In this document: positions 36,460-60,111 of the stretch, piece after piece
Numbering within the stretch: position 1 is the first letter of the stretch
Layout: each line of letters begins with the position of its first letter
Assembly (NCBI RefSeq): GCF_002571385.2
Contig: NW_019217962.1
Span: 126,904 to 188,892 of the forward strand
Direction: 5' to 3'
Source of the DNA: Stylophora pistillata
Lineage: Eukaryota
Length of the DNA: 61,989 nt
The notes under the pieces: model-generated
The model's input: the letters and a program-made list of their open reading frames with translations, nothing else
What the model was told of the DNA's origin: nothing
The model's database searches: none
Translations under genes and position numbers: made by a program

Positions 36460-39400
36460 TCAGTCATTATAAGCTCCATCATCTAAAAGAGGGAGTGTCA
36501 AATCATCTTCATCAGTCGCCCTTAAGTGGACTCGCATGGTGGCATTCTCCGCTGCATGCGATCGGCCAAGAAGAACAATCATTGACATCACCATGCCAAA
36601 GACAAGAACCACGTTCACCACTACGATCATCCAAACAATGGGTGTGGATGAGGCGGGGTTCCGAGCTGCATACCTTACGTTCATGAAAGAGAAATGAAGG
36701 GTCAGAAGAACCAAAGCCTCTGCTGTATTTTCTAATGGAAACTTTTGGTAAGAATCAATATATGGTTTAAAGAGCAACTGAAAGCAAAGGGAAACCAGCA
36801 AAACAAAGCAAACAGCTATTGTCTGAAAGGACGATGAACGAGTAATGAGGGACAACGCGAAAGCGATCAGCATCCGCCTTAGAAGAAAGATGATCTCAAA
36901 ACAGGAACGGAATTCTTTCTTGTATGGCAAGTAGATGGAACCGAGCCAACTGTCCAAACTTTCTTGGTCTTGCTGGGGCAGCTCGTATCTTATGGCGACC
37001 TTATTGTTTCGTAAAAGAGGAAGGAAAACTCCAAACGGCACACCCATCGCATAAAGTCCTAGCGAAAGCCAGCCTAGCACCTGTAGCATGGTGTAGACAG
37101 GACCTTCACACTCCATCCATGGTGCTTCCCTCAGGTAATGGTAGTTGTTGTCCTTTGCACAAGGAGCTAAGACTGAGGCGGTTTTCTTTACAATGGGAAA
37201 ATATGTGACATTGAGGGACACAATGGAAAGTTGCAAACAGGTATTTCGTAGTCGTAGTCGTCTTTCTTGCAAATTGTGAACGTTAAGAATACCACCCATG
37301 AGGCAAACAAGACCAAAGTACGACCAAATGCAGAGGATGCAAATAACAGGTAGGAGAATAAGAGATCCAAGTTCACCGAGTGGAGTAAACAAGTTAGGAA
37401 ACTCACAAGCCAGGCCAGAGAAATGAAAGTTAAACACGTTGCTGATGTATCGTTGAATTTTAAGAACTCGAGGTGGCCAAATGTTGGTGCAGGAGATCAA
37501 AGCGTCCAGAGTTTGAAAATAATAAACACTGATCTTCATAATTCCTCGTGCAGCCCTTCCTCTTTCAGCTAAACCTATAAAGAGGGCTATTGCATTGAGT
37601 TCAAGTAGCCATGCAGGAATTATGTGGAAAACGGCTAGTAATGCTAAGATTATTATTTGAGTAAAAACTAAAACTGTAGAGAAAAAGCGCTTTTCCTCGT
37701 AAAGGCAAAAGCCGAGAGTCATCAAAATGATAGTCAGGACAGCAAGTGCAGCCAGGATGAAGACACTAGTATTACTTTGAGGACAAGCATGGCAAATGAT
37801 TCCTTGTTTGTAAAATCCATGTTCACAAAGTGAACAAAATCGATCTTTACTCCCTGTCAGGCAGAGGCACGATTTGTTGCAAATGGTGGAGGGACTGCGG
37901 TCTGTGTCAATCCAGCAGCGACAATTACCTGATGGATTGCAGGGTGTTCTCACGTGAGGGCTGGTGCCCAAAGCTTGTGAACAGCTAACCAGATGAGTCA
38001 CGTTCTGATCACGTGATGAAGGCCAATGTCCTCTTTTGATTGTCATATTCTGAGAAGGAGGTTTCTCATCCTTACAAGTTCCACCTTCCATGCAGGGTAG
38101 ACAGGTTTTCCCAGAGCCATAATATCCTCTATCGCAAATGCAAAGACGGTAAAAATAATAGCTGGGATCCAAAATCACCAGTGTGTTGTCATTAAGGCCG
38201 ATATTTGGACATTTAAACTTGTCAATTGGGTTCCTGTACGTCAAAGTTACAAAATCAACCTTCATATACTTTGGCAATATTCCATGTTCTTCTTCGTTAT
38301 TATGCATTGAAGGATTTTTGGAAACGTCTAAGAGTTTCAAGGAAGGTAAGTCTGCATAATTTCCAGGGATTTGTCCAGAAAGGTTGTTCGCTGAAACATC
38401 AAGATCATGGAGGAAGTACAAGATATGAAAGGCCCACGGAAGCTCTCCTTTTAGGCTGTTCTTCTTTAAATCCACGGAAATCAAATTCTCAAATATCCAC
38501 AGTTCAGTTGGAATGATGCCATAAAAATTACACTCACCTATGTTCAGAATACGTAGAGATTTTCTTGATGATTCTAGTGCGACTAGCAAGGAATTAAAAC
38601 TGTGGGTGAGATTCTTATTACCAGCAAGGATTAGTACCTCCAGATCATTAAACTTGATCCCTTCCTCAAACGATGTTAATTGATTTCCACTTAAGTCGAC
38701 AATATCACGAGAGGAAACTGAGCCGATATTTCTGGGTATTTTTCCAGAAAAATTGTTTCTGGCAAAATTCAAATATCGTAAGTGAGTCATGTTACCCAAA
38801 GTTGGCGGAATGTTTCCAGTGAAACGATTTCCTGGCAAGAGACACTCAACCATGGCAGGATAATAAAGTCCAAAATCGTCGGGCAAAGTTCCGTTTAATC
38901 CAGCCCGTGACAGGTGCATATATCGTAGAGACGACAGATTGAAAAGGTTCGCAAAGCCTCCACTTAGGGATTTTGCACTTTTAAGATCCAAAAACCAAAG
39001 TTTTTTCAATTTTGAAATGCTCTTCGGTATTGAACCTGTCAATCTGCTTCCCCCGAGACCGAGAACTTGTAATTGCGTCAAGTTCCCAATGTCTTTTGGA
39101 ATTTCACCAAAAAAGCCATCCCTCAACTGACAGCAAAGCTGGACTATTTCCAGTGACTTCATCGATGGTAAAATTTCATCAGGAATCTTACCAGATAACT
39201 TGTTAAAAGGGAGATGAAGAGTGCGTAAATTGGTCATGTTGGCAGACAAAATTTCATTGAGATTGCCTGATAACTCAGCATTGGTGCCAATGCACAAAAT
39301 CTGTAGATTACGAAGCTTCCACAGGCTTTTCGGAAGGGTTCCATTTAAGTTGTTGTTTATCAAAGTGATACTAATAACATGGCTATTGGTGATATCGCAT

Positions 39401-40472
39401 TTTATTCCGTGCCAAGAACAGTGTGGTACTGAGTCGTTTCCCCAGTGAGTGTTGTTATTCCACTTGTGACCAGCTGTTAGATTATAAATCTCCATAAGCA
39501 CATTTCGTTCTTGCTGGGGTGAAAATGATCTGTATAATGTGATATTGGGTATCAAAATCTCACTTGTACATCTGTAGGCAATAGCCTTATCGATATTCGT
39601 TGGTCTAAGTTTTTCTGGCACAACTGAAAAACAAATCAAATGAGTTATTGACGGGTTTTAGTTTGACCTGCTTAAAGCGGCCTTCTAAGAATCAAAATAC
39701 TTAAAAAATGAAAGTGTCGGATGTGAGATTGCATATAAACTCAACCAAAGGTTTAATGACTGTGAATTAATATGTGGGTCTGAAAATACGTATTTATAAG
39801 ATGAAACTTGTCCGATATAACTAATCTAGCGATGGGATCATATTAAAATTCATCGAAACGCTCCACTGTCAAGAAATACAACTATTCTTCATATATGGAG
39901 ATGAGATTTGCATATCAAAACTGTTTCTTGATTTGCTCAAAGTCTTTATATTTTCGCTTTCATTCCGGAAACCAAAATGAAATGAATTACCGACAAGGCG
40001 AAAAGATTTTATGCTCCGCATGGCAGATAATACCATCAGAAGTTAATTTTTTCCATGAAATTTCCAAGAGCAAAAGAAACGGATTTACAAATATTATGAT
40101 GTCGATATTTCAGCGTTAAGTGATTTTGATTGATATATTTTGCTCTTGTGCAGTTTTCGTTTTGGCCAGAATAAATTCAGCGGTGTAAGTGTACATTCCA
40201 GCTAGGCAGTTGAAGGAAGCGATTCAAAAAGAATTCAAAAGCTCTTCAGAGAAACCTAAATACGAACTAATGTAAACCGTACAAGCACACTCACCTCTAC
40301 TTTCTCTGTCCTCTTCACAGAACGAGTCATCTCGATAAGAAATATACTTTCCCCATTTAAATTCGTCTGGTTCCAGAAGCTGGTATCCTTTACAATTAAC
40401 ATATAAACTGATAAGGATGAATTCTGTCATGATAGCCCACCGAAAACAGCACCTCAGCGAGGATTTCAGCAT
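36460..40472 (-). CDS. LRR receptor 1: signal peptide, plant-type LRR ectodomain, Cys-rich region, ~10-TM domain; 2 exons, ~1113 aa
   Basis: Exon 1 is 40295-40472 (MLKSSLRCCFRWAIMTEFILISLYVNCKG...ESR, phase-1 donor G|gtgagt). Exon 2 is 36460-39623, after the acceptor tgtttttcag. It has the cap motif WGNDSVPHCSWHGIKCD, repeats of LxxLxLxxNxLxGxIP, a Cys-rich stalk and many hydrophobic segments. Confidence 0.88.
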
Positions 40473-43400
40473 CGCAATTGTATCTATCGATCTCTGCGTT
40501 TGTATCTATTAGAGTGTCGGATTTCACTAAAAACAGATTATATCGGGTAATGTTTCAGCTAAACTAAAATGAAAATCGAGTAGGGTACTTAGAGAAGCAA
40601 AAACTACTTATATTGTTACCAAAAAATACTGCTAGTCTCCTTCAGGCGATGAGATCAACTGAGTACGCGTTACCTACGTGCTGTTGTGCTGAGCTGTGAT
40701 TAGATGGAATCCCCGACTGTGATTGGCGCATCTTTCGGATCAGGTTCCCTCTGCAGACCGCGGCCGCACGGCTCTCCAGCTCTCCCAGACCTCTGGAATT
40801 TCACTTCAACTCTGCCAGGATTGTTAATGTTGTTAGGGTGAAGTCTTATATGAGTTTCCTCTTTCACCCTGTGTGTATAAAAATGGGGATCACAATCAAC
40901 AAACTTTACTTCGTTCCAGGGCGGGCAGTGTCCGGTGTTGTGGGGATAGTCTGAGACGATGCAGGTCTTTGTCTTAGCGAATGGGATATCCCTGTAGTGA
41001 TCCTTGATTCTCTCTTGCCTAGGTCTGCCAGTTTAGCCGATGTAAACCTTTCCACACTCAATAAGAATCCTGTATACTACGCCACCCTGTTTAGCCAACA
41101 GGGTAGACGGCATCCTTTAGGTGTACTAGATGTGACTGTAGCGTAGCCCCTGACTTGAAAATAGCGCATATGCCTTGTTGTTGTAGAAAGCGGCGAAATT
41201 GTTCGGAGAGGCCTTTGACGTAGGGCAGGACCTCAGTGGATCTGAACTCGGTAGGGGGTTCAGGGCTAGCGGTCGGTGTCTTAGTTTTGGTTACCCTCTG
41301 CACGAAGAAGGAAAGACAACCATTAGAAACAAGAACGGAAGACAGATGTTCCTTCTCCGGCATTGTAGATAACCGAGAGTTTTATTTCGAGATGTTTCGT
41401 GCGCTCGTAAAGGCATTTGACAATAGCGCGCTTTACCAATTGCGGATGGCGAGAATCATAGGCTAGGTATTGGTCAGTGTGTGTCGGCTTCCTGTAGACG
41501 TCGGTGGTAAGGCGTCAAACGGGTTCTCTTGTAACTGCGGAGTCGAGGAAGGCGAGTTTGTTGTTTCTTTCCGTCTCCATAGCGAAGCGAATGAAGGGCT
41601 ATTGGTGGTTTAAATGTTGTGGGAAGCTTTCTAAACTGTTATGGGCCAAGATGGTATAGGTGTCGTCTAGGAAGCGTTTATAGATACTGGGTTTGTAGGG
41701 TGATGATGTTACTGTTTGTTCTTCAAAACTCTTCATGTAGGTTAGCGATGACAGCGGAAACCGGGCTGTCTACAGCTGCGCCCTCTGTCTGCTCGTAAAT
41801 TGATCCATTGTACTCGAAGTACCTAGATCTCAATACGAAATTTAGGAGGTCGGTGATCTGACTAGGTGCTAGTGTCGTGCGGTTAGACAGGCTGGGATCG
41901 TTTTCCAGTTTCTGCCGAGCTGCCTGTACAGCTTCGTCGATCGGAACGTTGGTAAACAACGCTTCAACGTCGATGGGCACCGTGATCTCGTTTTCTGAGT
42001 TGGGCACTGTAAACTTTGAAGCAAAACGGATATCTGATAGTGAAAACATTGAATCGTCGTGCCAAACTATGCTGAGGGTTATGGTGAGTCAGTCAGCGGC
42101 GTTCGCTGTTGTTGTTTTCATCAGGAGACAGGAAGCCACAGGATGACACTCTAACCTTCAAGAATTCAACATGAACACTAAGTGCTTGAAACGAAGAGGA
42201 TATCTATCCGAGGCCGTCTACAACAAGATCGGACCAAAAAACAAACAGCCGCCTAGAATGTACGGTTTACCGAGGATTCTTAAAGCCAGTATACCTCTGA
42301 GACCAATTGTGTCATGCGTGAACACCTTCGTATATGAGTTGTCCACTTAGTCTAGCTAACATCTTATCTCCACTAACAGGTGACTCAGAATTTACAGAAA
42401 GACGAGCAGTATGCAGTCGAAACGTCGCGATCCGCATCCCAAGTGACCATTTCGTGGGACAAACGATTAAATCTCTTCAAAGTTTTGTTTACCACGATGA
42501 ATAACCACAACATATATTATGATATTGTTATTCCTTTCGCAGTGCACGTAGCACAAGGAAAACATGAGTCCTTTACTCAGGGCCCGCGCAGTAAGGTCTG
42601 AGTATGTGTGTTTAAGCGAGAAGGGGGATGCACAAGTTTCAGCCAACAAAGCAGCGGGATGCGGGCATGCTTAGCAGGACAAGTTTCTTTCAAAAATGTA
42701 CGGGGGGACTAATCATAAAGCCCCTTGCCTAGCCCTTTCCTCTCCGTAGTCCCTGTCACTATAAATCAAACCCCAGACCCACAGCTTCTGAGCGTTTGAT
42801 TGGTTGAAAGACATTTATTATTTCTAAACGAAAAATGAGCACAATAACACGTACCCCTCCTTTGCTAAAATTACAAGCTCTTCAGTGAGTGAGAAAACGT
42901 TTCGTTGATACATCAATGCCTTGTTTCGCTTATTTTCTTCATGATCTCAGAAAACTGAATTTCTAACTGAGGTTCTCTTTAGTTCCCCACGTTTTACGCT
43001 AAAAAAGGGGCTTCCTGTTCACGGCGTTTCCAATTGATGGCAGTGTCCCGAGTTTGTCAACAGTCAGGTGGTATCATACAGACTCTCGTTAAATTTTATT
43101 TCGCAGCCATCTTGGACCATCTTTCGTAAGATTCTTGCAATGTTTCGCGTATCGTCAATCCCACAGTGCGGCCGCCCTTCAAATTTCAAACCAAGGTTAT
43201 TGACCATGTCTTCAAGAGTCCCATTTTTCATTTTGTAAAAATTTCTGTACAATTTTCTCAGATTAATCCACTTTCTGGCGTACTTGGGTATAAGAATGGA
43301 GCAGAGTTGGCACTGTTCCGAGAAGAACCGCTTCATATCATGAGGGCTACATTCGGAAAATAAAGAAAGGAATTACTATAAAACCTCTGGTAGCCCCACT

Positions 43401-44105
43401 TTCTCATAGGCCCCTCCCACTAATAATCTGCGGTCTTGAATGAGCCCACTGTTTTAATCCACCCCTAACTCAGACCAAAAACTTCGGGGTCGTTTATGGC
43501 CTAAGAAATCCATCGTGAGTTCGTAAGCTCAACGTCTACAAGGTCTGCAAATTCATTACTCTATTTCTGCCTGGGCGAGACACCATCACGGCGTCTCTCT
43601 CTACCTTGTAGTATATACGAGTACCTGTCACTGGGGTAACAACTCAGTTTTTCCGAAACTCAGTGCAGGGAGTGGAAGAAACGTGTGCGAGAAGTAAACT
43701 CACCCATCAGTAACAACAGCAAATTTATATTCTGATCCAAGTTCATGTTTGTTAAGCCATTGGTGAAAGTTGTCAAGGACTCCTGGGAATGTATCAGCAT
43801 TATCCACCGTTTCCTACCCAGCAAAAGAAAGTAAGTAAAAGTTATTAAGGCCTACATTATAGACAATCCAGTCATCTGAAAGGAGATGACATAAAATACT
43901 AATCAAGCCATGGACTCTTGACAATACATTCAAAACTACAGTCACAAGTCTAACTGTCAGGGACCTCAGAGGGGATGAGGCTGGTAGGGCCATAGCCCCT
44001 CCCCCCCCCCACCCCAATCAGATCTTGAGAATTAGAGGGTCAACTGAGGTAACACACTAAAACAACTGTCTTAATCTGAACAAAATTCTAAACATTGACT
44101 CATTT
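40182..44105 (+). repeat. Segmental duplication copy A (paralogous to ~57668-61805)
   Basis: Colinear similarity runs from ggtgtaagtg..cagctaggcagttgaa through receptor-1 exon 1, the Penelope relic, ERI1 exons 5 and 4, and into ERI1 intron 3 (actgaggtaacac..aaaacaactgtctt). Confidence 0.9.
40630..42470 (-). mobile_element. Decayed Penelope-like element (RT and GIY-YIG on -, with an inverted 5' RT segment on +)
   Basis: Minus-strand remnants DVEALFTNVPIDEA, GAAVDSPVSAVIANL and GVVYRI..CGKVYIG. Plus-strand YGLPRILKASIPLRPIVSCVNT at ~42260-42330. Pseudo-LTR/hammerhead remnant gcagtcGAAACGTCgcgat at ~42414-42432. Confidence 0.82.
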
Positions 44106-47100
44106 CCATGTATACTGAAAAAGAGTGATTAAAACTACGCTTGGGCACTCAAATGTTTCCCACCAGCTACTTTTAGTAAATACTGGTTACTAAGCCCAGA
44201 AGGATCATATAGCAGGGTCAGAGCTACTAGACTAATTTTTTTTTTCTGTAATAGTTTATTTATTCCATCTAACAGAGCATTCTACAATATAATTAATTCT
44301 ATGGTCCAGAGAAAAATTAGTGTAAAAATATAAATTCACTGTGGAAACTAATTTAATATACACTAGGAAAGAAACATTTTGATTGATATTAAGTTTTTTT
44401 TTTACCTTAGAAGATTCTCAATGTTTAATATCTCTTCACTATCACATGCTTTAGAAAACACATTTTGCTGGTATAAGTAATATTTTTCTAATAATAAACT
44501 CAAACTAGACTCATAATGCTTAAAGAACCATTTAAAAAATAAATTCCATGTTGCAGCGCATCTGTTCATTATTACAAGTACAGTGAAACCTCGATTTAAT
44601 GAAGTGCTAAGGGACTGGGTTAATTGGTTTGTTATATTGAGGGTTTATTATATCGAGGTTCTGTGGCATACATTTTACGGTAACTTTAGCCAGGCTGAAA
44701 CTGAAGTATACTTCGTTATACTGAAGACTTTGTTATATAGATCGAGGTTCATTAAATTGAGGTTCCACTTTACACGTACAGTAGATCAAAGATGACCTGA
44801 AAGCATGGTATGAACAAAGAAGGTGGCACATGAGGTGCAGCTGAGTGTTTCACTGATGTTCTTACTACTGAGTCTCCTGTGATTTGTTTATGAACAGAAC
44901 CACAGCAACATGAAATCTGTTTGTTTTATGTAATAAAGATGCAAAAAGTTGATAATGGTGACATCATGGGTTTTTCCTCCAATAGTAAGTAAGAACCAAT
45001 AATGTAGAATTCAGCTTATTATCTAAACAAAAATCAGAGCACAAGACTGGTTACCAGGACTCTAGTGATAGAGATTAAAGAAATTACTCATGGACATGAG
45101 TAATGAATAATAATGTTGTTAATATTTTGACTTTTGTTACCTGAGTAACTCCAGTTAGGTTCTGACAGAACTGTGATAGTTCTGGCTTATCTTGTGGTTT
45201 GCAGTACTCGTGAAATTCAGACACCTGAAGAGATAATTTTATGTCAAACTGGTGTAAGACCTGTCCTGAATACAAACAATAGCTAACATAGCGTGTTGAA
45301 ATGCATTTCAAAGATCAGCGGGGAGGATCAAGGGATCTCTTGTTAAAAACACTAATTGAAAGTATCAATCATTAGCCCCAAATGTCAAATTTGGTTGAGT
45401 TACCATTAGGTTTGTTCACATGACTTGAATGTTTAAAACATTTCTGATGGTGGCCCACATTTTCTTTTATCTGAAATACAGAGTATAACTGAATGCCAAG
45501 GCCAATTCCTTTTAGACTCCCAATTAGCCCTCTTGAGGGGAGGTAATCTGACTAGAGAATGAGTAGAACTATACATGGTGAAAGGCTGCTGGTCAAATGT
45601 AGCCAAGTGGTATTGGGCACTGGTCTTGTTACAGGTGGTGATCCCAAGTTGAGGCCCTCCACTCTACTACTCACTGGTCAGATTTGTCCTCATTTGCTTC
45701 AAGTTCAATTCATTGGGTATACTTTGTACACTGTACTTCGCCACTTGGGATTTCCTAACACTTTAAGCTTAATATGTTTATTTACAATATTCATTTGTTT
45801 TCATTTATGGCCTACATGTATATGAAAATTACTTCGTGCAAATCTGGTTCACCCCAGTAAAATACAGTGTATTCTTATCAGTTTTTTTCACTCAAGCAGC
45901 AGATCACAATAACAAGGATGGAAAATGCAAAATCTTCAACTTTCAACATGAGTTCTAGTACCTTTTTCTTGTAACAGAAATCACTAAAATATATTTGATC
46001 TTGGAAGGTAATACCTCTCTAACCAAAAAGATTGCCACAGCAAAAAATTCAAAAGCAAGGCTTCCCCATCAACCCTATCCTATTCCCCTGGAGACGATTT
46101 GTTTAAACAAAAGTCACTGTGATAGATGTTTTCTTTCAGGCAAGAAATAATTTTCAGCAGTACCAAAGCAATTTCCAAAATTGTCAACATTAAGACCCTA
46201 CAGAGTTTTCATACTACACTTTATGTTGCTAAGAGGCCATAAAGAGAAAAACTCCAGGATTAAGCAGCCACTACTCAACATAGTTAATGCCTGCGAGAAA
46301 CTGCAAATTTTTGGATGCTTTCTAAATGTTGCATTCTAAAATAAATTAGCATTGAAATATTTTATTTTCAAACTTCTTGGATTTGTGTTTCTAAGTCCAA
46401 GGATGCCAGAAATAAAGGCAAAAAAAAAACAATTCAAACTACAATAGTTTAAAATCATTTTGATCACAAACTGCAGACATTACATTTCAATTACAATGTA
46501 TATGTTACTTTAATTTAATGAACAATACACATGTCGTTTTAATACCCCCTGAAAATTAAGGAGAGTTGGCAAATAGATGTTCTTGCAAAGCTTACAAACC
46601 TTTTCCAGTGTAACTGCATCCAAAAGTACTGCAGGGAACTCAATTATCTCATGGATGTAGCCGTTTGGATTATTCTCCTCGCACGTTCCTTCAAAATCTA
46701 TGACACAGTAGAAATGAACCTCGTTTGTTCTCTTTTCTTGTACCAGCTTAGCTTGAGCCAGCTTCTCTTTTTTTATGTGATTTTTTAGACGCTTTCGGAG
46801 AACTTCCTTTACCCCTCTACAAAATGAATCAGAATTGTTAGATTCTCAAACTTAAGCCTCTTCTTCGCAGATGAAAGTGGGGCATCTACATGTAGTAGAT
46901 AAAAATATACAACTGCAGGAAGGATATTTGTCTTATCTTCGATCAATAATTTTATTACAGTGTGTGGAAAGTACATCATCTCTCTCTATGAGATATTGAT
47001 GGTCTCTGAATTTTGCGTTATTTGGCGAGGCAGAGCTTTGACTACGTTTTAATGCCTTCCTAATCCTTCCCTTATCCCCATTCTCTTATCCGTTAGTCAG

Positions 47101-47345
47101 GCTTAGAACAGCGCCGTTGAACCGAGTTTGTTTGAGTTAATTTCAGGTCAAATATTTCATTGCACTCACCGTGAATCCAGCCCACGCTCTTTCAGTTCTC
47201 TCTTGACTTCATCCTTTTTCATTTTATTTATTTTTCCGTTTGAAAATGATATTTCCCTGAACACTGGATGATCATTGAGGGGAGCTTTCCTGTTCTCCGT
47301 ACTTTCATTTTCACTCCCAACTACATCAAGAAATCCTTCCGCCAT
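43064..47345 (-). CDS. ERI1: 3'-5' exoribonuclease 1 (SAP + DEDDh), copy 1; 5 exons, ~289 aa
   Basis: Exons 47170-47345, 46600-46816, 45141-45224, 43704-43813 and 43064-43346, all GT-AG with consistent phases. SAP region HPVFREISFSNGKINKMKKDEVKRELKERGLDSRGVKEVLRKRLK. Catalytic motifs VIDFEGTCE, HEIIEFPAV, TDGPHDM and HCGIDDTRNIARI. Confidence 0.9.
44581..44770. mobile_element. Tc1/pogo-like MITE in ERI1 intron 3
   Basis: ta-CAGTGAAACCTCGATTTAATGAA...TTCATTAAATTGAGGTTCCACT inverted termini. Confidence 0.65.
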
Positions 47346-47438
47346 TTTTTGCTTGTTTTCAAATTAACCGCTGATCGCATTGTCTTTCGGTCGCGTAAAA
47401 CCAGGCCTCTTCCGGTTTCCTTCTTGAGGAAGAGAATT
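47346..47438. promoter_or_regulatory. Putative compact bidirectional promoter between ERI1 (-) and LRR receptor 2 (+)
   Basis: 93 bp separate the divergent ATGs (47345 and 47439). The segment is CpG-containing, with an ETS-type CCGGAAG on the minus strand (47409-47415) and a YY1-like AAAATGGCGG overlapping the ERI1 start. Confidence 0.6.
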
Positions 47439-50400
47439 ATGGCTCTAACTCTTGTATCAAAATATTCCCTTCTACCCGTAGTGTTCAGGATCGTGGTGCT
47501 CCTCGTTTGCTTCGAACATAACCGATCTCTTAGGTTCGGAGGAAGCTTGTCAAACTATGGATCAAGGTCACTCTACTACAGAACAAGGCGGAACAAACCA
47601 GACATCGGAGGTAAGTGCGAGCCAGTAGAAAAGCATAGTCGACTCATAACAGGCAGTGTCGTACCACACTTGATACACACTTTTTTGTTTACTACTACTG
47701 ATAAAACAACGAACAGGGTTGTTTTTCTTTTTTTCTGCCAAGTATTCTTTGAGACTAGAATAGTGGGGCTGTGGTGCTGGGGGTTTATCGGGCGCTCAAA
47801 ACTTTCAGACCAGCTACCAAGGCGTAAAGTCACACTCTTCCGAGAAATTCCATTTCCACGATTTTCGTGAAAATCGGTAGAACTGGATTACTTGAATCAT
47901 ATAGTTCAGGTTACTTCAGAAGCAGTACATGTATGTAACCAATACACGTTGTAATTTGGTAATATCAACTAAGCTGAAATTGTAAATTGGCCACCGTAAA
48001 GAGTTAAGAGGCTGTCTCTCTTATTTCCACCCGGTCAATTTCGCGTCAAAAATAATTTTGCCTGAAACTCTGTCAACAGAAAGACTTTACTTAAGAAAGA
48101 ACTAAATTAGATTTGAATAAAGGCTGATAGTTTCAAAAGAAACTGTTTGGCACTGCGTCGCAGGGGGTAACGAAATAATTTGAATATATCAACAAAGTTG
48201 AAATGGTAAGTGTGATGTGCGATCCTCGCAGTAGATAGCGCTATTTATGCAATAGCGAAAATCAGACCTGAAAAAAATCAGGCCTGTACGGGACTCGAAC
48301 CACTGACCTCTGCGATACTAGTGCAGCGCTCTACCAATTGAGCTAACAAGCCAACTGGGAGCAGGCCGTTAAGTTGATTCGTAATAAACCCGTGAAAGTG
48401 ATAAATGAGATGCAATGAATATATGAAGTTCATATATTTTGAACTGCGGTATTAGATACGTATGATGCACGATCCTCGCAGTAGATAGCGCTATTTATGC
48501 AATAGCGAAAATCAGACCTGAAAAAAATCAGGCCTGTACGGGACTCGAACCACTGACCTCTGCGATACTAGTGCAGCGCTCTACCAATTGAGCTAACAAG
48601 CCAACTGGGAGCAGGCCGTTAAGTTGATTCGTAATAAACCCGTGAAAGTGATAAATGAGATGCAATGAATATATGAAGTTCATATATTTTGAACTGCGGT
48701 ATTAGATACGTATGATGTGCGATCCTCGCAGTAGATAGCGCTATTTATGCAATAGCGAAAATCAGACCTGAAAAAAATCAGGCCTGTACGGGACTCGAAC
48801 CACTGACCTCTGCGATACTAGTGCAGCGCTCTACCAATTGAGCTAACAAGCCAACTGGGAGCAGGCCGTTAAGTTGATTCGTAATAAACCCGTGAAAGTG
48901 ATAAATGAGATGCAATGAATATATGAAGTTCATATATTTTGAACTGCGGTATTAGATACGTATGATGTGCGATCCTCGCAGTAGATAGCGCTATTTATGC
49001 AATAGCGAAAATCAGACCTGAAAAAAATCAGGCCTGTACGGGACTCGAACCACTGACCTCTGCGATACTAGTGCAGCGCTCTACCAATTGAGCTAACAAG
49101 CCAACTGGGAGCAGGCCGTTAAGTTGATTCGTAATAAACCCGTGAAAGTGATAAATGAGATGCAATGAATATATNAAATTATAGAATCTACGCTTAACAT
49201 AGACGTCAACTGCTACGCCAACGACACGAACGCTAGATTGTTTGAGCGGTTGTTAAAGTTTCAGCGAGCAACTGAGAAAGTAGAAGCTAAAAACTGAACT
49301 GAAACTCTTTATTCGCACTATTTCAAGAGGTTACTACAGATTATAAAAGTCAGAATATATAAGAAACAGTAAATTACATCAATAATCAAAAGGAAATACA
49401 AGACGCCTTTCAATCTAGGCCAAGGGCTAAACGCTTGCTTCGACCTACAGATGGAGATCAGGAGGAAAAAAGCGCGTGCTTGCCGTCAACAAACCGGGCG
49501 AAGCTTCGAGAACACTGCAATTTAGGTCGGCCAACGTCTCCTACACTACTTGTACTTCTTCATTTGCCAGTCCGCTGCTAGCTGGAGCGAACCCGATTAG
49601 TTATGTTCGTGGCTTCTTATCACCGGTACAGGAAATCGGCCCGAATTATCGAGTGTTTCCGCACGTTGGTACAACGCAACAACAATAACAATAATATGAC
49701 CACTTTCATCGGTAACATGGTCAAACACGAGCGGGAGTGCTTGATATATTAACGATTTCCCGGATCCTGTAGGCAACTTAACAAAAACATCTTCTTTCTC
49801 GACTAAAACTTTTTTAATTGCAAGCTTCTGGTGAGCTTTAAGCTCGAAAATTTTGAACTTTGACGACGCTTTGCGAAAAGCTCCTTCAAGCACCGCCATT
49901 TGTCTTGTGTTTTCCACATGAGGATCGCGATAGAAAACGATATCTGATTGGACGAGTCTCAAAAGGTGAGTCTGGCGCGAAAAGGTTCCTGAAAATGGAA
50001 CCCGAGCTGTGATTGGCCAATTCGGAGAAAGGAATGTAGTGCGGTTGTCAGCAGCCGTTCTTTTGGGGGAGCGTTGCGTGACATCCAAAAAAAACGGCTG
50101 CGAGGGAGACTACATAGTTAAGCCACCGAATTTATATCAGATTGCTTAAAAACCTTTCTAGTTTGCCAAGAAAGTTAGAATTTGCCCTCTCAATATATTT
50201 GAAGAGGCGAATTTTAGCATATTTTGACCACTATAAGTCGCCATCGGCCGATGGCCGTAAATAACCTTTATTTAGACGTTAAGTTTTGGGATTTGGGACC
50301 TGGTTGATAACTCTATCCTACACAGCCGTTAAGTTTACACCTTTATAGGCAAAAACATGTACGTTTCCGATTTCAAAAGTTATGACCATTTCAGAATCAG

Positions 50401-53400
50401 CACATGCACGAACATTCGCGATATTTTCATCTACACTAAAATCGAAACACTGGAGCAGATTTCGTTATAAATACAGCTTACCTTCGGCGCATCTTGGTTT
50501 TATGTGAAATTTCAGATGTTCCTTGCTCTCCAAATTGGTGAACTTAATGATAACTCCAGCTAATAACTCCAACTTCAGCGGTCGGCATCTATCGACACTC
50601 TTCTTTAACTGGTTGTTGCGAAGTACTGTTGAAACTTTGGATCGCTGCTGCATTCTCTTCAAGAATCAGTCATATCACTCCACAAGTCTATATGCCGAAG
50701 TTTGGGGGCTAAAATTTGGAATTTAAAGCTGAACGATAGCACTATGGAACACAGCCGTCGTTCCGTTTTCACAGAGGTCCGCATTAACCATTGCCGGTGA
50801 ACCTGCTGGCACTTTATTTTTTCTGGAAGGCCTGTAAGTGTAGTATGGCATGCAAGTGCTTTTTCTAAAGAAGAATAGCGTCAGTCTGTAGCGAGTTTTC
50901 AGCGAGGTTGAAAAAGCTCTCAGAATGTAGAGGTGACATCAATGATCATCTACAAGCATGTCCTTTAGGTCAGCTTAGAGGAAAGGTACAAGAATATGAG
51001 CTTATCGTTAACAGGTCAGGGTTGCCACACGACCTTTCCCCTTATCAAGTTGAAGAACTCTGGATCTGCGAAAAGCGTTGAGGAAACATGGGTAAAAACT
51101 GGCGACCATGTCGCACTTGCCAGTACCCGCTGCACAACGGCCGGAAAAAGCAGCTAAATACTAGAAATGTAGTTCATCTCGACATGTCAAGGGAAGTTAA
51201 TACTATCTTTGCACAACTCGTTCCAACAGGTTCCGTATGATTTCTATGTAAATTCTAGCTTACCAATCAGGTATTGTCCTGAAATGTGGAGCACGGTTTA
51301 AATTAAGATAAGATCTAGACATATATTGAGGTGCGGTAAATGTCAGAATTCAGTATTTTGGAATTTGATTAACATTTGGGCCAAAGCTCGTACGCAAGTG
51401 AGTATAAAACAAAACAAAAGTCAAGAATCCTTTCCTGCAAAAATTCTATCTGAGGTCAGATGAAGCCGGTTGCTGTCGCAACAGCTCCATAGTAACAGCT
51501 GTGAGAGATGTCGCAAAAGGAGTTGGGGTTGAAGTTCATAGTTATCACTACTCGGAGCCGCAGTCTGGTGAAGACATTTGTAATCGTATCCTCTGCCCTA
51601 TGAGGTCCTCTATTCGTGCTTACTTGAACGAAGGGCACGATGTTCTAACTGTCGTGGACATGAGAGATGCATTAACGCAACACCCAATGAAGGGAACAAC
51701 CGCTGCAGTTAGCATAGTCAACGAATCAAAAAAGACTGTATAAATAACATTGAGCATTTTAGTAGCTTCCAGAACTTCGAATATGGAGATACCGGTCTGA
51801 GAGTTTGGAGATGTTATGGCATCGGTAAAGGGAAGTACATTCCATATGACGTGATTGATATCAAGCACCAAGGTCAAACGTCCCTTCAAGCCATAGAATC
51901 TCCAGGCTTTTATGATCCTCCTGAAAAGCATGTGGTCAAGCATGGTTCAAAGGAGAGCAAGGAAACAGAGAGTACAACGCATTGTTTGAATGCTCTGTGC
52001 TTGGATGTGTTGAAGTGATCGAAACGTTTTCGCAACTAGAGCTGCACCTGGACGTTGGAAAGCATACAGTCAGCAGGTTAAGCGAGTATGATGCAATCAA
52101 AATGGACTGAGCCCTTAAGTTCTCGTCGATAGTTACCGCTGGTATCGAGTGTTCGAGCTGTTCGTCAGATTCCAGTACGCCACTCACTTCTCCCGGGGTT
52201 ACTTCGCGCACTCGCCTCTACGAACAGGATGGGCCGTAGGCAAACCGAGGGTCAGTGTTAGATTTTCAAAGAATGTAAAAGAATACCTAACGGCACGGTT
52301 TACACTTGGAGAAAGAAATGGGCGGAAGGCAGACCCCGACCAAGTTGCAGTGGACATGCGAAATGCGAAAAATGAGTCAAAGACACGTTTGTTCACTGGA
52401 GAACAGTGGCTGACAAAGAGCCAAGTTCAGCGCTTTTTCTCCCGGCTAGCAGCAATGCGACGCAAAGATCAGAGTGTGATCGGGATTTTACTGGACGGGG
52501 AGACACGTATGACCTCTGTGAACGTTACCACAGTAACACACTTCAGAAATTGCATGTGGTTTTGTTGAGAGCCATCTGTAGTCATTTTGAGATCTCTATA
52601 AAATTGAGAGACATAAAGCAGATCCTCGTAGACAAACTGTCGGACGTGATTAGTGACTGTCAATGTGTTCACAGTAGAATTATGTAGAACATGTCTTATA
52701 CAGTTGCTGAAAGTGTAGAATATGCTCTACAGATACAAACTGCCTTTAGTTCCTATATCATTGAAGTTCTGAAGGCGTTGTCAATGTAATACTCAAAGCT
52801 TATAATATCTCTGACATTAAATTCTGTCGTGCTTTACGCACTTAGAATTCATAACTAAATCAGTGAAAGATAGAACCTAGTTTGACGACATGTCAAGCAG
52901 TATCTGATACACGATATAGGCATCGCACTGAGCCTTGCTCCTCATGTCAAAATTATTTAAGTAGTTTGATTTTAGTTTAGGTGAAAAAATTGCGAATGCC
53001 GGTGCATGTGCTGATTCAAACGGTCATAACTTTTGAAAAAATGAAAACGTACAGGGGTTTTTGCATACTTTTGCTTACAAAGGTCTAAACTTAACAGCTG
53101 TGTAGGATAGAGTTGTCAACCAGGTCCCAAATCCCAAAACTTAACGTCTAAATAAAGGTTATTTACGGCCATCGGCCGATGGCGACTTATAGTGGTCAGA
53201 ATATGCTAAAATTCGCCTTTTTAAATATATCGGGAGGGCAATTTCTAACTTTCTTGGCAAACTAGAAAGGTTTTTAAGCAATCTGTTATAAATTCGGTGC
53301 TTAACTATGCGAATCAAATATTTTACAATGTTACAAAATATGGCTATTTTCAATTTTCGAGACGTTGCGACGGTCCCCACGGACTGGGAAATAATTATGG

Positions 53401-56400
53401 CCCCTAACGCAGTCAGAAAATTATTTCGAATCAAACCAAATCTAATTTAGTTCTTTCCTAAGTGAAGTCTTTCTGTTGACAGAGTTTCAGGCAAAATTAT
53501 TTTTGACGCGAAATTGACCGGGTGGAAATAAGAGAGACAGCCTCTTAAGAAGTTGACGTTTCGAGCGTTAGCCCTTCGTCAGAGCGAATACACGTTGTAC
53601 TTTGAATCTCATTTCCCTTTCGAACGTTCCTAACCTTTTTACTCTTTGATTATGATCGGCCGGGAATCGAAGCGAAAACATGGATCATGAAATGATGTTT
53701 AAACCCGAGAACCTTGATTTACGAGTTATAGTCGATTGTGAATATCAAAAACAGGGCCATAGAAGGCAAGATCACGAAGCTCGATGGTCAAATGATTACG
53801 CTCCTGGCACCCCCGATTATAAAGCGAAATCATGGATCATGAAATGATGTTTAAACCCTAGAACCTTGATTTGCGAGTTATAGTTTTGTGAAGTCAGTTG
53901 TGAATATAAAAAACTGGGCCATAAAAAGCAGGATCACAAAACTCGAAGGTCAAATGACTCTGCTACTGGCACCCTCTATTATGATGTGGCTCAATGAATG
54001 AGGTCAGGAAAAATCCCTGAGGGTGTAGAGAAGCAGAATCCTTGCTGAATTTCATCTGTAATTACTTATTGTTGTCTTCTTTCCTTGTTTGTTGTACTTT
54101 TTTACTAGCTTTGAAGACAGAAAAACTGATACCTCTGAACTACGATGAAACTTTTGCCTATGGATGTTTGCACGATATCCCGATACCAAATAGTACTTTG
54201 GAAACAACATTCACGCCCCAACAAGAGAGAGCTGTACTTATGGAAATATTCAACCAAACAGCTGGTCACAGTTGGAGAAATAATGCTCACTGGGCCAACA
54301 ATTCAGTTCCACACTGCCTTTGGTATGGAATTACATGCGATCAAACCAATAGCTACATTATCAGTATCACTCTGATAGAAAATAATTTGGATGGAACCCT
54401 TCCAAAAAGTTTGTGGAAGCTTCGTAATTTGCAGGGTTTGTGTATAGGTAACAATGACAGGCTTTCAGGCAATCTTATTGAAATTTTGTCTGCCAATATG
54501 ACAACCTTGCTTCGTCTTGATCTTGCTTTTAATAAGTTGTCTGGTAAGATTCCTGGTGACATCTTACCTAAAATGGAGTCTTTGGTAAAAGTTCAACTTT
54601 GCTGCCAATTGGGAAAGGGCCTGTCTGGTGAAATTCCAAGAGACATTGGGAACTTGACTGAACTGCAAGTTCTCAGTCTTGGAGAAAACAGATTGAATGG
54701 CATGATTCCAAAGAGCATTGCCAAATTGAAAAAGCTCTGGTTTTTGGATCTTGAAAGTGTCAAATTTCTAAATGGAGGATTTGAAAACATGTACAATCTT
54801 TCATCTCTACGTTATATGCATCTCTCTCTTGCTGGGCTAAAGGGAACTTTGCCAGACGAATTTGGACTTTACTTTCCTGCTATGATTGAGTGTCTCTTGC
54901 CAGGAAATCTTTTCACCGGAGGCATTCCCTCAACAATGGGCAACATGACAAACTTGTGGCATTTGAACTTGGCGAACAACGATTTTTCTGGAAAAATACC
55001 AAAAGACTTAGGCTCAATACCCATGCTTCAAGTTGCTGATTTCAGCAGGAATCAGTTATCGGGGTTACAAGAAGGAATTGTTTTCAAGTCAAAATCCCTA
55101 GAAGTACTGAATTTGGCTGGTAATAAACAACTTAATATGACATTCAACAGCCTGTTAGAAGCAATGGAACCCGTAAATCAATCGTTGCGTATTCTTAACA
55201 TAAGCGAGTGCAATTTTCTCGGAAAAATCTCCCCAAAACTGTGGGACTTTCAAAATTTAATTTCTGTAGATTTAAGTGGTAATAGCTTGTTTGGACAGCT
55301 TCCATCTCCCCCAGATAATATGTTATTTCTACTTAATCTTGACGTCTCAGCGAACAACCTTTCAGGACAAATTCCGCAAGAATTTGCAAAACTCTTAGCG
55401 CTGGAAGTGTTCGACATATCACTGAATCCCAACATGCATGAATCCAACGAGGAAAGTGGAACTGTACCCAACTTCGTGACGGTTGATTTTAAAACTTTGA
55501 CGAAACGAAATTCAGATGATAAATTCAGGTGTCCCAATGCTCGGCTCAGTTACAACAAAGGACTTGTCGTGTTAGACCCAAATTACTATTTCTACCGCCT
55601 GTGCCTTTGCGACATTGGATACTTTGGCTCAGGAAGAACTTGTTTACCTTGTATGGAAGGAGGAGTGTGTCACGATCAAATGCTTCCTACGCAGTCAATG
55701 ATCATTAAAGAGGGATATTGGCCTTCATCTCTTCATAAAAACGTGACTCACCTGGTGAGATGTTCGCAAGCTTTGGGCACCAGTCCCCACGTAAATACAA
55801 CATGCAATCCAACAGGCGCTTGTGAATGTGAGATTGATCCTGATTGGCTTAAGGAAACGAATGGTGCAATTGACAGGCCATCCATTACTTGTGACAAGTC
55901 GTGCCTTTGTCAGAAAGGTAGTCGAGATAGGTTTTGCTCCCTTTGTGAACATGATTATTACAAACAAGGAATACTTTGTTACGCCTGTCGCAAAAGTGAA
56001 GCCAGTGTCTACATCATAGTCGTACTTTTAATTCTTACCATCCTGTTTATTATCCTTGGGTTTTTCTTTTACAAAAAGAAACGACTTCTTTCTGTTACTT
56101 TTGTCTTCTCTCAAATAATCATTTTGACCATTTTAGCGATGCTTCAAATCATTCCACCCTGGCTCCTCGAACTCAACATAATAGCTCTTTTTATTGGTTT
56201 AGCCGGAAGAGGAAAGACTGCAAGAGGAATTATGAAGACAACCGTGTTTTATTTCCAAACTTTTGATGCCTTATTGTCCAACAATGACGTTTGGCCAGTT
56301 GAAGTTTTGGAGATGCAGCGATACATTGGAAATGTTTTCAACTTTCGTTTCTCTGGCCTGGCTTGTGAGTTTCCGAGCTTGTTTACGCCTCTCGGCGAGC

Positions 56401-57296
56401 TTGCATCTCTTTTGATTCTTCCTCTCATTTGCATCTTGCTTGTTTGGTTGTATTTTATCCTTGGTTGCCTAGCCTTGAAAATTTTTGAACCTCACAATTC
56501 AGAAGAAAGACGATTTCGACTTCGGAATACCTGTTTACAACTCTCGATCATGACCCTTAACTTTACTTACTTTCCCATTGTGAAAAAAACAGCGTCTATC
56601 CTAGCGCATTGTGGTGAGGATAATGGCCAGCGTTATTTGAGAGAGGCACCGTGGATGGAGTGTGAAGGCAGTGACTACACCGTCCTACAGGTGCTAGGCT
56701 GGCTTGCTCTGCCGCTGTATGTGATCGGTGTGCCTTTTGGAGTGTTCCTTCCTCTCCTGCGCTTCAATAACCTAGCCAGAAGACATGGGCTGCCCCAACA
56801 AGACCAAGAAAGTTTGGACAGTTGGCTCGGTTCAATCTATTTGCCATATAAGGAAGAGTTCCGTTCCTTTTTCGAGATCATCTTTCTTCTTAGGCGGATG
56901 CTGATCGCTTTCGCGTTGTCCCTCATCACTCGTGCATCGTCCTTTCAGACGATAGCTGTTTGCTTTGTTTTGCTAAGCGCCCTGTGCTTACAGTTGTCCT
57001 TAAGGCCGTTCAACGATTCTTACAAAAATTTCCCATTGGAAAACACAGCAGAGACGTTGGTTCTCTTGACCCTTCACTTTTCTTTCATGAACGTAAGGTA
57101 CGCGTCTCTGAACCCTGACTCATCTACACCCATTGTTTGGATGATTGTAGTGGTCAACGCGGTTCTAATTTGCGGAATGGTTGTTTCGATAATTTTGTTG
57201 TTGAAAAAGGCGGAAAATGCAGATGGAGGGCATGAAGAACGTGCACCAGTCCTAGGAAACGGCGCTGGAGAACAATATGGAACTTTTGAGGAGTAA
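47439..57296 (+). CDS. LRR receptor 2: signal peptide, plant-type LRR ectodomain, Cys-rich region, ~10-TM domain; 2 exons, ~1119 aa
   Basis: Exon 1 is 47439-47610 (MALTLVSKYSLLPVVFRIVVLLVCFEHNRS...RTRRNKPDIG, phase-1 donor G|gtaagt). Exon 2 is 54109-57296, after a long polypyrimidine tract ending tttactag (phase 1). Exon 2 is clearly paralogous to receptor 1 and is certain; the exon-1 link is inferred. Confidence 0.85.
48212..49175 (-). repeat. Tandem array of near-identical 250-bp units, each carrying a tRNA-Thr(AGT)-like sequence and an oligo-T tract; ends at an N
   Basis: gatcctcgca recurs at 48221, 48471, 48721 and 48971. tRNA-like segments on the minus strand at 48280-48352, 48530-48602, 48780-48852 and 49030-49102. 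Confidence 0.92.
48280..48352 (-). pseudogene. tRNA-Thr(AGT)-like sequence (pseudo-tRNA or SINE head); three further copies at +250, +500 and +750
   Basis: GGCTTGT/ACAGGCC acceptor stem with T discriminator, D arm GCTC..GAGC, anticodon loop CTAGTAT, B box GGTTCGAGTCC. The T stem has two mismatches and the anticodon stem has an A-C pair. Followed by ga then T7. Confidence 0.7.
49600..50112 (-). mobile_element. AcademH-like transposon end with RecQ-type helicase fragment, nested in the left Sola3 TIR
   Basis: Terminus TAGTCTCCCTCGCAGCCG at 50112 (-). ORF LKAHQKLAIKKVLVEKEDVFVKLPTGSGKSLIYQALP carries RecQ-like Q motif and Walker A. Confidence 0.65.
53552..53585 (-). ncRNA. Minimal type I hammerhead ribozyme motif with intact CUGACGA/GAAAC-GUC core
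   Basis: Reverse complement reads gctCTGACGAagggctaacgctcGAAACGTCaac. Stem I is weakened relative to the 14141 copy. Confidence 0.6.
53671..53975. repeat. Two-copy tandem duplication (~150 bp) near the 3' end of the receptor-2 intron
   Basis: aagcgaaa.catggatcatgaaatgatgtttaaaccc.agaaccttgattt...ctggcaccc begins at ~53671 and again at ~53822. Confidence 0.8.

Positions 57297-60066: not shown

Positions 60067-60067
<1 letters not shown>

Positions 60068-60111
<44 letters not shown>

What the first reader, a model, noticed from the sequence alone, without database searches (positions are those of the whole stretch)
36460..57296. Candidate undescribed receptor class: plant-type LRR ectodomain fused to a ~10-TM domain with no kinase or TIR
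Seen: two intact ~1115-aa paralogues with a plant RLK/RLP-style cap (W...HC.W.GI.CD), 24-residue LxxLxLxxNxLxGxIP repeats including an irregular VQLCCQL repeat, a Cys-rich stalk, then about 10-11 hydrophobic segments with polar motifs (K...Y.QT.D, NxTYFP, WLGSIYLPYK..FR..FEIIFLLRR, P..DSY..FPLEN..E) and a short tail. Established: this LRR subtype typifies plant immune and developmental receptors, while animal LRR receptors (TLR, LGR, LRRC8) use other LRR classes and membrane or signalling modules. Inference: the membrane domain resembles the TRP-like/FLC-type multipass domain common in protists, so these could be ligand-gated channels or transporters used in microbe or symbiont sensing. Pipelines would probably mislabel them as receptor-like kinases.
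Basis: partly seen in the sequence, partly recalled or inferred. Interest (0 to 1): 0.85.

Follow-up and report, generated by a model that had tools for sequence, protein, structure and literature searches.

The report
Coral LRR receptors on Flc/Pkd2-like core
Two neighbouring coral genes encode surface proteins that join a plant-style leucine-rich-repeat sensor to an 11-helix membrane core distantly related to fungal Flc/Pkd2 calcium-channel-like proteins. The family is real, old and widespread but unstudied in animals, so it is a plausible one-protein sensor whose function is still unknown.

Summary
The window is Stylophora pistillata. It carries two intact, head-to-head, two-exon paralogues (A about 1113 aa, B 1119 aa, 67% identical). 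Each has a signal-peptide exon, a plant-type cap, about 15 LRRs of 24 residues, a Cys-rich stalk, an 11-helix core and a short unconserved tail. There is no kinase, TIR or 7TM domain. Both are already in NCBI as 'putative leucine-rich repeat-containing protein DDB_G0281931'.

The ectodomain's best solved relatives are all plant LRR receptor kinases (GSO1, E 3.9e-87). The core has no Pfam hit in A or B themselves. Coral relatives 66-68% identical pass Pfam PF06011 ('TRP', which to my knowledge holds the fungal Flc/Pkd2 proteins). A confident AlphaFold model (pLDDT 91) matches nothing in the PDB.

The LRR-plus-core fusion also occurs in sponges, a jellyfish, a hemichordate and a nemertean, and these form one clade. 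The same core sits behind other ectodomains in many protists and at dozens of loci in this coral.

So this is not a new class. It is an uncharacterised animal branch of a known, poorly understood family. The scan had already met a sister family on other DNA of this genome (s1-775558). Channel function is inferred, not shown.

The parts
40295..40472 (-). Gene A exon 1: start codon at 40472 (NCBI's model starts at the second ATG, 40430), hydrophobic signal-peptide-like N-terminus, GT donor after 40295 (phase 1)
   Evidence: the first 45 residues of P0001 are encoded at 40430-40296
39624..40294 (-). Gene A intron (671 bp, GT-AG, phase 1)
   Evidence: no RNA contig depth here while exon 2 is covered
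38269..39623 (-). Gene A exon 2, first part: linker, LRRNT_2-like cap (39394-39513) and about 15 plant-type 24-residue LRRs (38269-39378)
   Evidence: pLDDT above 90
37780..38268 (-). Gene A Cys-rich stalk (about 160 aa, 16-17 family-conserved cysteines, beta-rich)
   Evidence: in relatives this region gives sub-threshold DUF7630/DUF7631 hits, and in gene A sub-threshold Ephrin_rec_like/TNFR-like hits
36562..37779 (-). Gene A 11-helix membrane core (N-terminus outside, C-terminus inside), PF06011-like in its C-terminal half
36460..36561 (-). Gene A short cytosolic tail and stop codon; the 3'UTR continues below 36460
   Evidence: tail unconstrained; RNA contigs run through the stop codon without a joint
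47439..47610 (+). Gene B exon 1: start codon, signal-peptide-like N-terminus, GT donor (phase 1)
47611..54108 (+). Gene B intron (6.5 kb, GT-AG, phase 1), at the same position as in gene A; holds repeats and a helicase-like ORF fragment on the other strand
54109..55985 (+). Gene B exon 2, first part: cap, LRRs (about 54357-55472) and Cys-rich stalk
55986..57296 (+). Gene B membrane core, short tail and stop codon

Best explanation
A and B, with a third copy C just outside the window, are intact, transcribed genes under purifying selection. They encode cell-surface sensors. Each has a signal peptide and a plant-type LRR solenoid that binds a ligand outside the cell. A rigid disulfide-rich stalk follows, then an 11-helix core with its N-terminus outside and its C-terminus inside. 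The core is a remote member of the Flc/Pkd2 ('TRP', Pfam PF06011) membrane family.

The cytosolic tail is short and unconstrained, and no enzymatic or adaptor domain is present. The output must therefore come from the core itself. Two features stand out as candidates: the strongly conserved cytosolic loop (WLGxxYxPYK...FE....LRR) and the conserved polar residues inside the helices.

The most likely mechanism is inferred by analogy with fission-yeast Pkd2. Ligand binding or force on the ectodomain is passed through the stalk and the Cys-bearing outer loops and opens or modulates a cation (Ca2+) pathway in the core.

Shown here: gene structure, architecture, plant-type LRR, family relations, distribution, selection and transcription. 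Inferred: surface location, ligand binding and ion flux.
For: - Architecture and integrity.
- Selection: dN/dS is about 0.2 in the LRR, stalk and core alike, while the tail is unconstrained.
- Transcription: polyA RNA contigs cover exon 2 and the 3'UTR but not the intron, and stranded reads fit the minus strand.
- Plant-type LRR: (GSO1 3.9e-87, then MIK2, FLS2, PEPR1).
- Core folds confidently: pLDDT 91.4, pTM 0.89; full length pLDDT 85.
- Link to PF06011: coral relatives P0104 and P0291 (66-68% identical to A over the core's C-terminal half) score 33 bits against a gathering cut-off of 28.5. Eight of 22 distant relatives hit it, the best at 1.4e-6. Precomputed PF06011 labels appear on several coral homologues. 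Nearest Atlas clusters carry PF06011.
- Body plan: S. pombe Pkd2 is described as signal peptide, extracellular domain, 405-aa nine-helix core and disordered tail (bioRxiv 10.1101/2022.08.11.503631).
- Function of a relative: by the title and abstract of PMC9727806 (listed), membrane stretching activates the calcium permeability of Pkd2, tested by in vitro reconstitution.
- Topology: 16 N-glycosylation sequons lie in the ectodomain, and the Arg/Lys-rich loops fall on the predicted inner side.
Against: - A and B themselves give no PF06011 hit even at E up to 10, and the relatives' match covers only the C-terminal half of the core.
- Whether PF06011 proteins are true pore-formers is still debated. 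Yeast Flc proteins are also described as flavin carriers (PMC9600462).
- The PF06011 fold has no solved structure, and the model matches no channel in the PDB.
- There are no ligand, localisation or physiology data for any animal member.
- Exon 1 and the splice junction are not covered by the reads I laid.
Confidence: 0.45

Rival explanations
1. CRMP-like contact sensor that is not a channel. The Cys-rich stalk and multi-helix core would match the 'conserved core' of the alveolate cysteine-repeat modular proteins. Those proteins sit with their N-terminus outside, pair through their membrane cores, and trigger regulated exocytosis on contact with a target. Under this reading the coral proteins signal through core dimerisation and partner proteins, for example to trigger secretion or phagocytosis on contact with a microbe, prey or symbiont.
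For: - The CRMP core is described as EGF-like/ephrin-receptor-like Cys-rich modules plus 9 TM helices. Dictyostelium homologues have different ectodomains but the same core, and the TM cores are predicted to heterodimerise (PMC9815656; PMC9670195).
- Relatives of our core carry Ephrin_rec_like.
- NCBI names our proteins after a Dictyostelium protein.
- An earlier scan note on a sister coral family drew the same comparison (s1-775558).
- Diverged paralogues sit side by side, as the A and B clades do in CRMPs.
Against: - No CRMP sequence or model was at hand, so homology was not tested here.
- The A-core with B-core complex test gave no verdict: 0.33 against a mark of 0.34.
- This rival is compatible with the PF06011 link and may describe the same superfamily, so it differs from the best explanation mainly in the output mechanism.
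Confidence: 0.25
2. Housekeeping carrier or membrane-homeostasis protein of the secretory pathway, as proposed for yeast Flc proteins (flavin transport, ER and cell-wall homeostasis). The LRR domain would face the lumen and serve adhesion or quality control rather than signalling.
For: The PF06011 link. Flc1 is described as regulating calcium homeostasis and flavin transport (PMC9600462). S. pombe Pkd2 is also reported in the ER (listing). Expression of gene A is low and even.
Against: - The large, heavily sequon-studded, constrained plant-type LRR domain is typical of ligand-binding surface receptors.
- The family has swappable adhesion or recognition ectodomains: cadherin, TIG, beta-helix, LRR.
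- Lineage-specific tandem duplication fits sensing better than housekeeping.
Confidence: 0.1
3. Relative of polycystin-1 (LRR plus 11 TM helices) or of another canonical TRP channel.
For: Superficial likeness only: N-terminal LRRs, 11 helices, and the Pfam name 'TRP'.
Against: - No PKD_channel, PLAT, GPS/GAIN or REJ hit.
- Foldseek and VIA-align found no TRP, polycystin or any six-helix channel fold, although many are in the PDB.
- The profile search of PDB sequences was empty.
- The LRRs are of the plant type, not the animal type.
Confidence: 0.03
4. An ordinary LRR-7TM GPCR (LGR-like), or a receptor kinase or TLR whose kinase or TIR exon was missed.
For: None beyond the LRR ectodomain.
Against: - Eleven helices, not seven. 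No 7tm family hit, and GPCR structures score as noise: TM-score 0.11.
- NCBI models, transcriptome-derived orthologues marked complete (Oscarella, Sanderia) and RNA contigs all end at the same stop codon and run into the 3'UTR without a joint.
Confidence: 0.02

Closest known systems
Pfam PF06011 'TRP' family: fungal Flc1-3/YOR365C and S. pombe Pkd2, Trp663, Trp1322 (membership of these named proteins in PF06011 is from my own knowledge)
   Same: Same body plan: signal peptide, extracellular N-terminal domain, multi-helix core of about 400 aa, and a cytosolic tail that is poorly conserved or disordered. The C-terminal half of the core is detectable by the Pfam model in close coral relatives. 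There is no solved structure, and the fold is not the six-helix TRP fold.
   Different: The ectodomain is a plant-type LRR plus a Cys-rich stalk, not the Ig/ML-like lipid-binding domain. The core has 11 predicted helices, not 9. A and B themselves fall below Pfam detection. The host is an animal.
Cysteine-repeat modular proteins (CRMPs) of Apicomplexa and ciliates, and their Dictyostelium homologues
   Same: Variable adhesive or recognition ectodomain, then Cys-rich EGF-like/ephrin-receptor-like modules, then a multi-helix core with the N-terminus outside, and paralogue pairs.
   Different: Homology was not tested here. CRMPs are much larger, are described with 9 helices, carry no LRRs, and act in rhoptry or mucocyst exocytosis.
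Plant LRR receptor kinases and receptor-like proteins (GSO1, MIK2, FLS2, PEPR1, Cf/Hcr-type RLPs)
   Same: The ectodomain class: an LRRNT_2-type Cys cap and 24-residue LxxLxLxxNxLxGxIP repeats, with best PDB sequence matches down to 3.9e-87.
   Different: The membrane part is 11 helices, not a single pass. There is no kinase and no RLP-type short tail. A Cys-rich stalk replaces the plant juxtamembrane Cys pair.
Sister families in the same coral genome that share this core (for example the CUB-Ig-LRR gene of scan note s1-775558, and loci with DUF7630 plus core)
   Same: Cys-rich module plus the same core. A profile of the core finds 69 matches in the genome, and several of those fetched carry DUF7630 and weak PF06011.
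   Different: Other ectodomains and multi-exon genes. In a tree of the core they lie far from the LRR clade.
Animal LRR membrane proteins: TLRs, LGR GPCRs, LRRC8, polycystin-1
   Same: LRRs combined with a membrane part.
   Different: A different LRR class, different topology and different membrane fold. None of their signature domains is present.

Membership tests
Pfam PF06011 (TRP; Flc/Pkd2-type) | Sequence match to the family model at or above its gathering score (28.5 bits) | tested here: inconclusive
   A and B give no hit at E up to 10. Coral relatives 66-68% identical to A over the region score 33.2 and 33.1 bits, and two others score 24-25 bits. Eight of 22 distant relatives hit below threshold.
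Pfam PF06011 (TRP; Flc/Pkd2-type) | Body plan: signal peptide, extracellular N-terminal domain, multi-helix core of about 400 aa, cytosolic tail | tested here: met
   compared with the description of Pkd2 in bioRxiv 10.1101/2022.08.11.503631. The core has 11 helices against 9 in Pkd2.
Pfam PF06011 (TRP; Flc/Pkd2-type) | N-terminal ML/Ig-like lipid-binding domain (TRP_N) as in the fungal members | tested here: not met
   Pfam finds only LRR families in the ectodomain.
Pfam PF06011 (TRP; Flc/Pkd2-type) | Same three-dimensional fold of the core | not testable with these tools
   No solved structure exists and no library of predicted cellular structures was available. The model matches nothing in the PDB.
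Plant-type (LRR-RLK/RLP) ectodomain | 24-residue LxxLxLxxNxLxGxIP repeats, with closest relatives among plant LRR receptors | tested here: met
   About 15 repeats, mostly 24 residues. The best PDB hits listed are nearly all plant LRR proteins, led by GSO1 at 3.9e-87, and none is from an animal.
Plant-type (LRR-RLK/RLP) ectodomain | LRRNT_2 N-terminal cap | tested here: inconclusive
   18.5 and 20.1 bits against a cut-off of 20.7 in A and B. Above the cut-off in orthologues: 24.1 bits in Tubulanus and 21.9 bits in P0157.
Plant LRR receptor kinase or receptor-like protein (whole protein) | Single-pass membrane helix followed by a kinase or a short tail | tested here: not met
   11 helices and no kinase.
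7TM GPCR (LGR-type) | Seven-helix bundle with a 7tm family signature | tested here: not met
   No 7tm Pfam hit. GPCR chains appear only as noise in Foldseek, at E 0.4 and TM-score 0.11.
Polycystin-1 / canonical TRP channels | PKD_channel or six-helix pore domain, with PLAT and GPS | tested here: not met
Toll-like receptors | Cytosolic TIR domain | tested here: not met
   The tail is about 30 residues with no TIR. The transcript ends at the stop codon.
CRMP family | Conserved core: Cys-rich EGF-like/ephrin-receptor-like modules followed by the multi-helix core | not tested
   The architecture is alike, but no CRMP sequence or model was available for comparison. My last wide protein search reached only an Anaeramoeba Ephrin_rec_like protein.

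The most novel reading that the evidence does not exclude
These are single-chain 'receptor-channels' inherited from the first animals. A plant-type LRR pattern-recognition domain directly gates a Flc/Pkd2-type Ca2+-permeable core. Recognition of a microbe, symbiont or prey surface would then become a calcium signal without a kinase, TIR domain or G protein. Model animals have lost this route, and corals have expanded it.
Probability: 0.2. Interest if true: 0.85.

Novelty: new variant of a known kind. Interest (0 to 1): 0.55.

Why it matters
Animal innate-immunity and symbiosis research looks for LRRs on TLRs and NLRs. This family is a third way of wiring an LRR sensor, and no published description turned up in my searches. 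It is conserved from sponges to hemichordates and is missing from all the animal families it was compared with here.

If the core conducts ions, it would be the first animal example of an LRR-gated channel. It would also give a function to the poorly understood PF06011 and possibly CRMP-like core, which matters in fungal and parasite biology. If it does not conduct ions, it is still a large unstudied receptor family in reef corals that could be placed on existing cell atlases and on symbiosis or disease transcriptomes.

Tried and rejected
- Structure searches. Foldseek of the core model against the PDB gave no hit at E 0.001 or better. VIA-align against 48,161 chains gave only two-helix hairpin matches, best Z 8.3 over 59-71 residues. 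The halves of the core were not folded and searched separately.
- PDB sequence searches with the core alone and with a core profile gave noise only: photosystem subunit at 0.29, pannexin at 0.03.
- The second wide protein search, with a core-only profile, was swamped by coral sequences and did not reach fungal PF06011 proteins. The third, from the Rhodelphis core, returned four proteins and no CRMP.
- The second Atlas search gave only weak leads: a ciliate furin-like/VSP membrane protein at 0.81 and a ctenophore TIG protein at 0.76.
- The complex test of the A core with the B core scored 0.33 against a mark of 0.34. That is no verdict, neither for nor against.
- Literature searches for DDB_G0281931, PF06011 with LRR, LRRNT_2 in animals, plant-specific LRR in early animals, and TRP C-terminal domain with Ephrin_rec_like found no paper on this architecture. 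The library lacks most subscription journals.
- A faster-evolving LRR domain, as in many immune receptors, was not seen. dN/dS is about 0.2 in all domains as a gene-wide average, and site-wise tests were not run.
- Reads did not show the exon 1 to exon 2 junction of gene A.
Full-length work used the database's own entries, P0001 and P0044.

Full report
**What is there**

The window is from Stylophora pistillata. The product of the minus-strand ORF is 100% identical to an NCBI protein of that coral. Two long ORFs lie head to head: 36460-39639 on the minus strand (gene A) and 54042-57296 on the plus strand (gene B). They are 67% identical over their whole length.

Each ORF is the second exon of a two-exon gene.
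- Gene A: exon 1 is 40295-40472, the intron is 39624-40294, and exon 2 is 36460-39623.
- Gene B: exon 1 is 47439-47610, the intron is 47611-54108, and exon 2 is 54109-57296.
- Both introns are GT-AG, phase 1, and sit at the same position. Both first exons encode a hydrophobic, signal-peptide-like N-terminus.

For full-length work I used the database entries P0001 (1099 aa, from the second ATG) and P0044 (1119 aa). NCBI names both 'putative leucine-rich repeat-containing protein DDB_G0281931'.

**Are the genes live?**

A third copy, C, lies about 8 kb beyond the window's end. It is 1086 codons long and 92% identical to B. A diverged fourth copy, D, is 36% identical and sits on another contig, and there are broken copies as well.

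Among A, B and C, dN/dS is about 0.2 in the LRR part, the stalk and the membrane core alike. Only the last 30 or so residues are unconstrained.

PolyA RNA-seq contigs from two studies cover exon 2 of A and run through the stop codon into the 3'UTR. They have no depth in the intron or upstream and show no joints. Stranded raw reads lie in the orientation expected for a minus-strand RNA. Expression is low, and exon 1 and the junction were not covered.

Nothing adds a further exon. NCBI models and transcriptome-derived orthologues end at the same place.

**Ectodomain**

Pfam finds LRR_14, LRR_1, LRR_8 and LRR_4. It also finds a borderline LRRNT_2 cap, at 18.5 and 20.1 bits against 20.7. The cap is above threshold in orthologues.

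There are about 15 repeats, mostly of 24 residues with the LxxLxLxxNxLxGxIP pattern. Against all PDB sequences, the 60 best hits listed are LRR proteins, nearly all from plants. They are led by GSO1 at 3.9e-87, then MIK2, FLS2 and PEPR1. No animal LRR protein is among them.

The ectodomain has 14-16 N-glycosylation sequons. The stalk of about 160 residues holds 16-17 cysteines conserved across the family. AlphaFold predicts it as small beta-rich modules at pLDDT 83-90. In relatives it gives sub-threshold to threshold hits to DUF7630 and DUF7631, and in gene A sub-threshold hits to Ephrin_rec_like and TNFR-like modules.

**Membrane core**

Pfam finds nothing in the last 440 or so residues of A or B, even at E up to 10. 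AlphaFold with a 65-sequence alignment gives a confident model, with pLDDT 91.4 and pTM 0.89.

The model has eleven membrane helices. Three family-conserved cysteines sit in the outer loops, and Arg/Lys-rich loops sit on the inner side. This gives an N-out, C-in topology. The full-length model scores pLDDT 85.

The model matches nothing in the PDB. Foldseek gives no hit at E 0.001 or better, and GPCRs, TRP channels and transporters appear only as noise. An all-against-all VIA-align search finds only helical hairpins. Sequence and profile searches of PDB chains are empty.

So the core is not a 7TM receptor and not a six-helix TRP or polycystin channel.

**What the core is related to**

A full HMMER scan of 1.84 billion representatives finds 329 clusters at E 0.001 or better. 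Among 22 of the more distant relatives that I scanned with Pfam, the same core sits behind LRRs, beta-helix/PMP repeats, cadherin and TIG domains, Ephrin_rec_like or NCD3G modules. Eight of these 22 hit Pfam PF06011 ('TRP') weakly. The best is 27.8 bits against a cut-off of 28.5.

Two coral fragments 66-68% identical to A over the region pass the cut-off at 33 bits, aligned to the C-terminal half of the model. Precomputed PF06011 labels also sit on several coral homologues, and the nearest ESM Atlas clusters carry PF06011, DUF7630 and Ephrin_rec_like. The core is therefore best read as a remote branch of PF06011.

To my knowledge, PF06011 is the family of the fungal Flc proteins and fission-yeast Pkd2. 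Pkd2 is described as signal peptide, extracellular domain, nine-helix core of 405 aa and disordered tail. It has no solved structure and differs from canonical TRP channels (bioRxiv 10.1101/2022.08.11.503631). By the title and abstract of PMC9727806, membrane stretching activates its calcium permeability, tested by in vitro reconstitution. Flc1 is linked to calcium homeostasis and flavin transport (PMC9600462).

**Distribution**

LRR-plus-core proteins of the same length and layout occur in:
- several scleractinians;
- the scyphozoan Sanderia and the nemertean Tubulanus;
- the sponges Oscarella and Corticium and the hemichordate Saccoglossus.

In a tree of the core alone, the animal LRR-type proteins form one group (SH-aLRT 92), with bilaterian, sponge and cnidarian subgroups. 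This fits vertical descent from an early animal ancestor. The protist LRR-type proteins I could place (Thecamonas, Rhodelphis) group elsewhere, and non-LRR coral members are distant.

Outside animals, the core is found in Apusozoa, Amoebozoa, Rhodelphis, a glaucophyte and Anaeramoeba. A profile of the core finds 69 matches in the Stylophora genome. That means dozens of loci, and several of those fetched carry DUF7630 and weak PF06011.

I read the two CRMP papers. Their 'conserved core' of Cys-rich EGF-like/ephrin-receptor-like modules plus nine helices looks much like what is here. It has its N-terminus outside, has Dictyostelium homologues with other ectodomains, and is predicted to heterodimerise through the cores (PMC9670195, PMC9815656). 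I could not obtain a CRMP sequence, so that link stays untested. A complex test of the A and B cores gave no verdict.

**How it probably works**

The tail is short and free to vary, and no enzymatic or adaptor domain exists. The output must therefore reside in the core. The most conserved element is the cytosolic loop and following helix (WLGxxYxPYK...FE....LRR), together with polar residues inside helices such as the invariant Q in FYxQ.

My best reading (0.45) is a sensor in which ligand binding or force on the LRR and stalk gates a cation pathway, as proposed for Pkd2. The main rival (0.25) is a CRMP-like contact sensor that signals through dimerisation and partners. The two may be the same superfamily seen from two literatures. 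A housekeeping carrier role (0.1) fits less well with the recognition-type, duplicated ectodomains.

**Verdict**

It is a new variant of a known but poorly understood kind. The genes are annotated yet uncharacterised, and I found no paper on this architecture. Interest 0.55.

Noticed in passing
L001:5741-9001 (+), i.e. G000:C179 about 8 kb beyond the window's end: A third intact paralogue, C (1086 codons, 92% identical to B, dS 0.13). The cluster therefore has at least three genes, and B/C is a recent tandem duplication.
   Followed up: partly
whole genome G000 (for example C46:313019, C6:693614, C690:95828, C943:13328, C463:243327, C77:774775, C47:464569): A profile of the membrane core finds 69 matches in the Stylophora genome. 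Many are last exons of about 530 aa holding a DUF7630 Cys-rich module plus the core. Others sit in open frames of 1300-2200 aa with no Pfam hit. This is a large, mostly unannotated family.
   Followed up: partly
window 49597-50088 (-), inside the 6.5 kb intron of gene B: ORF fragment with a DEAD/ResIII helicase N-terminus (E 5.8e-7), probably a remnant of a mobile element or a nested gene fragment.
   Followed up: no
window 53680-53990 (+): Two adjacent copies of a unit of about 150 bases just upstream of exon 2 of gene B, inside the intron. It looks like a short interspersed repeat.
   Followed up: no
window 13384-13914 (+) and 5510-6013 (+): ORFs with a GIY-YIG nuclease motif (E 5.6e-5) and an ALKBH8_N-like motif (E 4.7e-5). 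They are likely transposable-element remnants.
   Followed up: no
window 43064-47346 and 57300-61390: Other notes of this scan (s1-785167, s1-785222) report ERI1 exonuclease genes interleaved with the LRR genes, one head to head with gene B. If so, the duplicated unit would be ERI1 plus receptor. I did not check this.
   Followed up: no
L003:4081-5088 and G000:C654:147311-154471: Broken or multi-exon relatives of the LRR-type core with in-frame stops, either pseudogenes or split genes.
   Followed up: no
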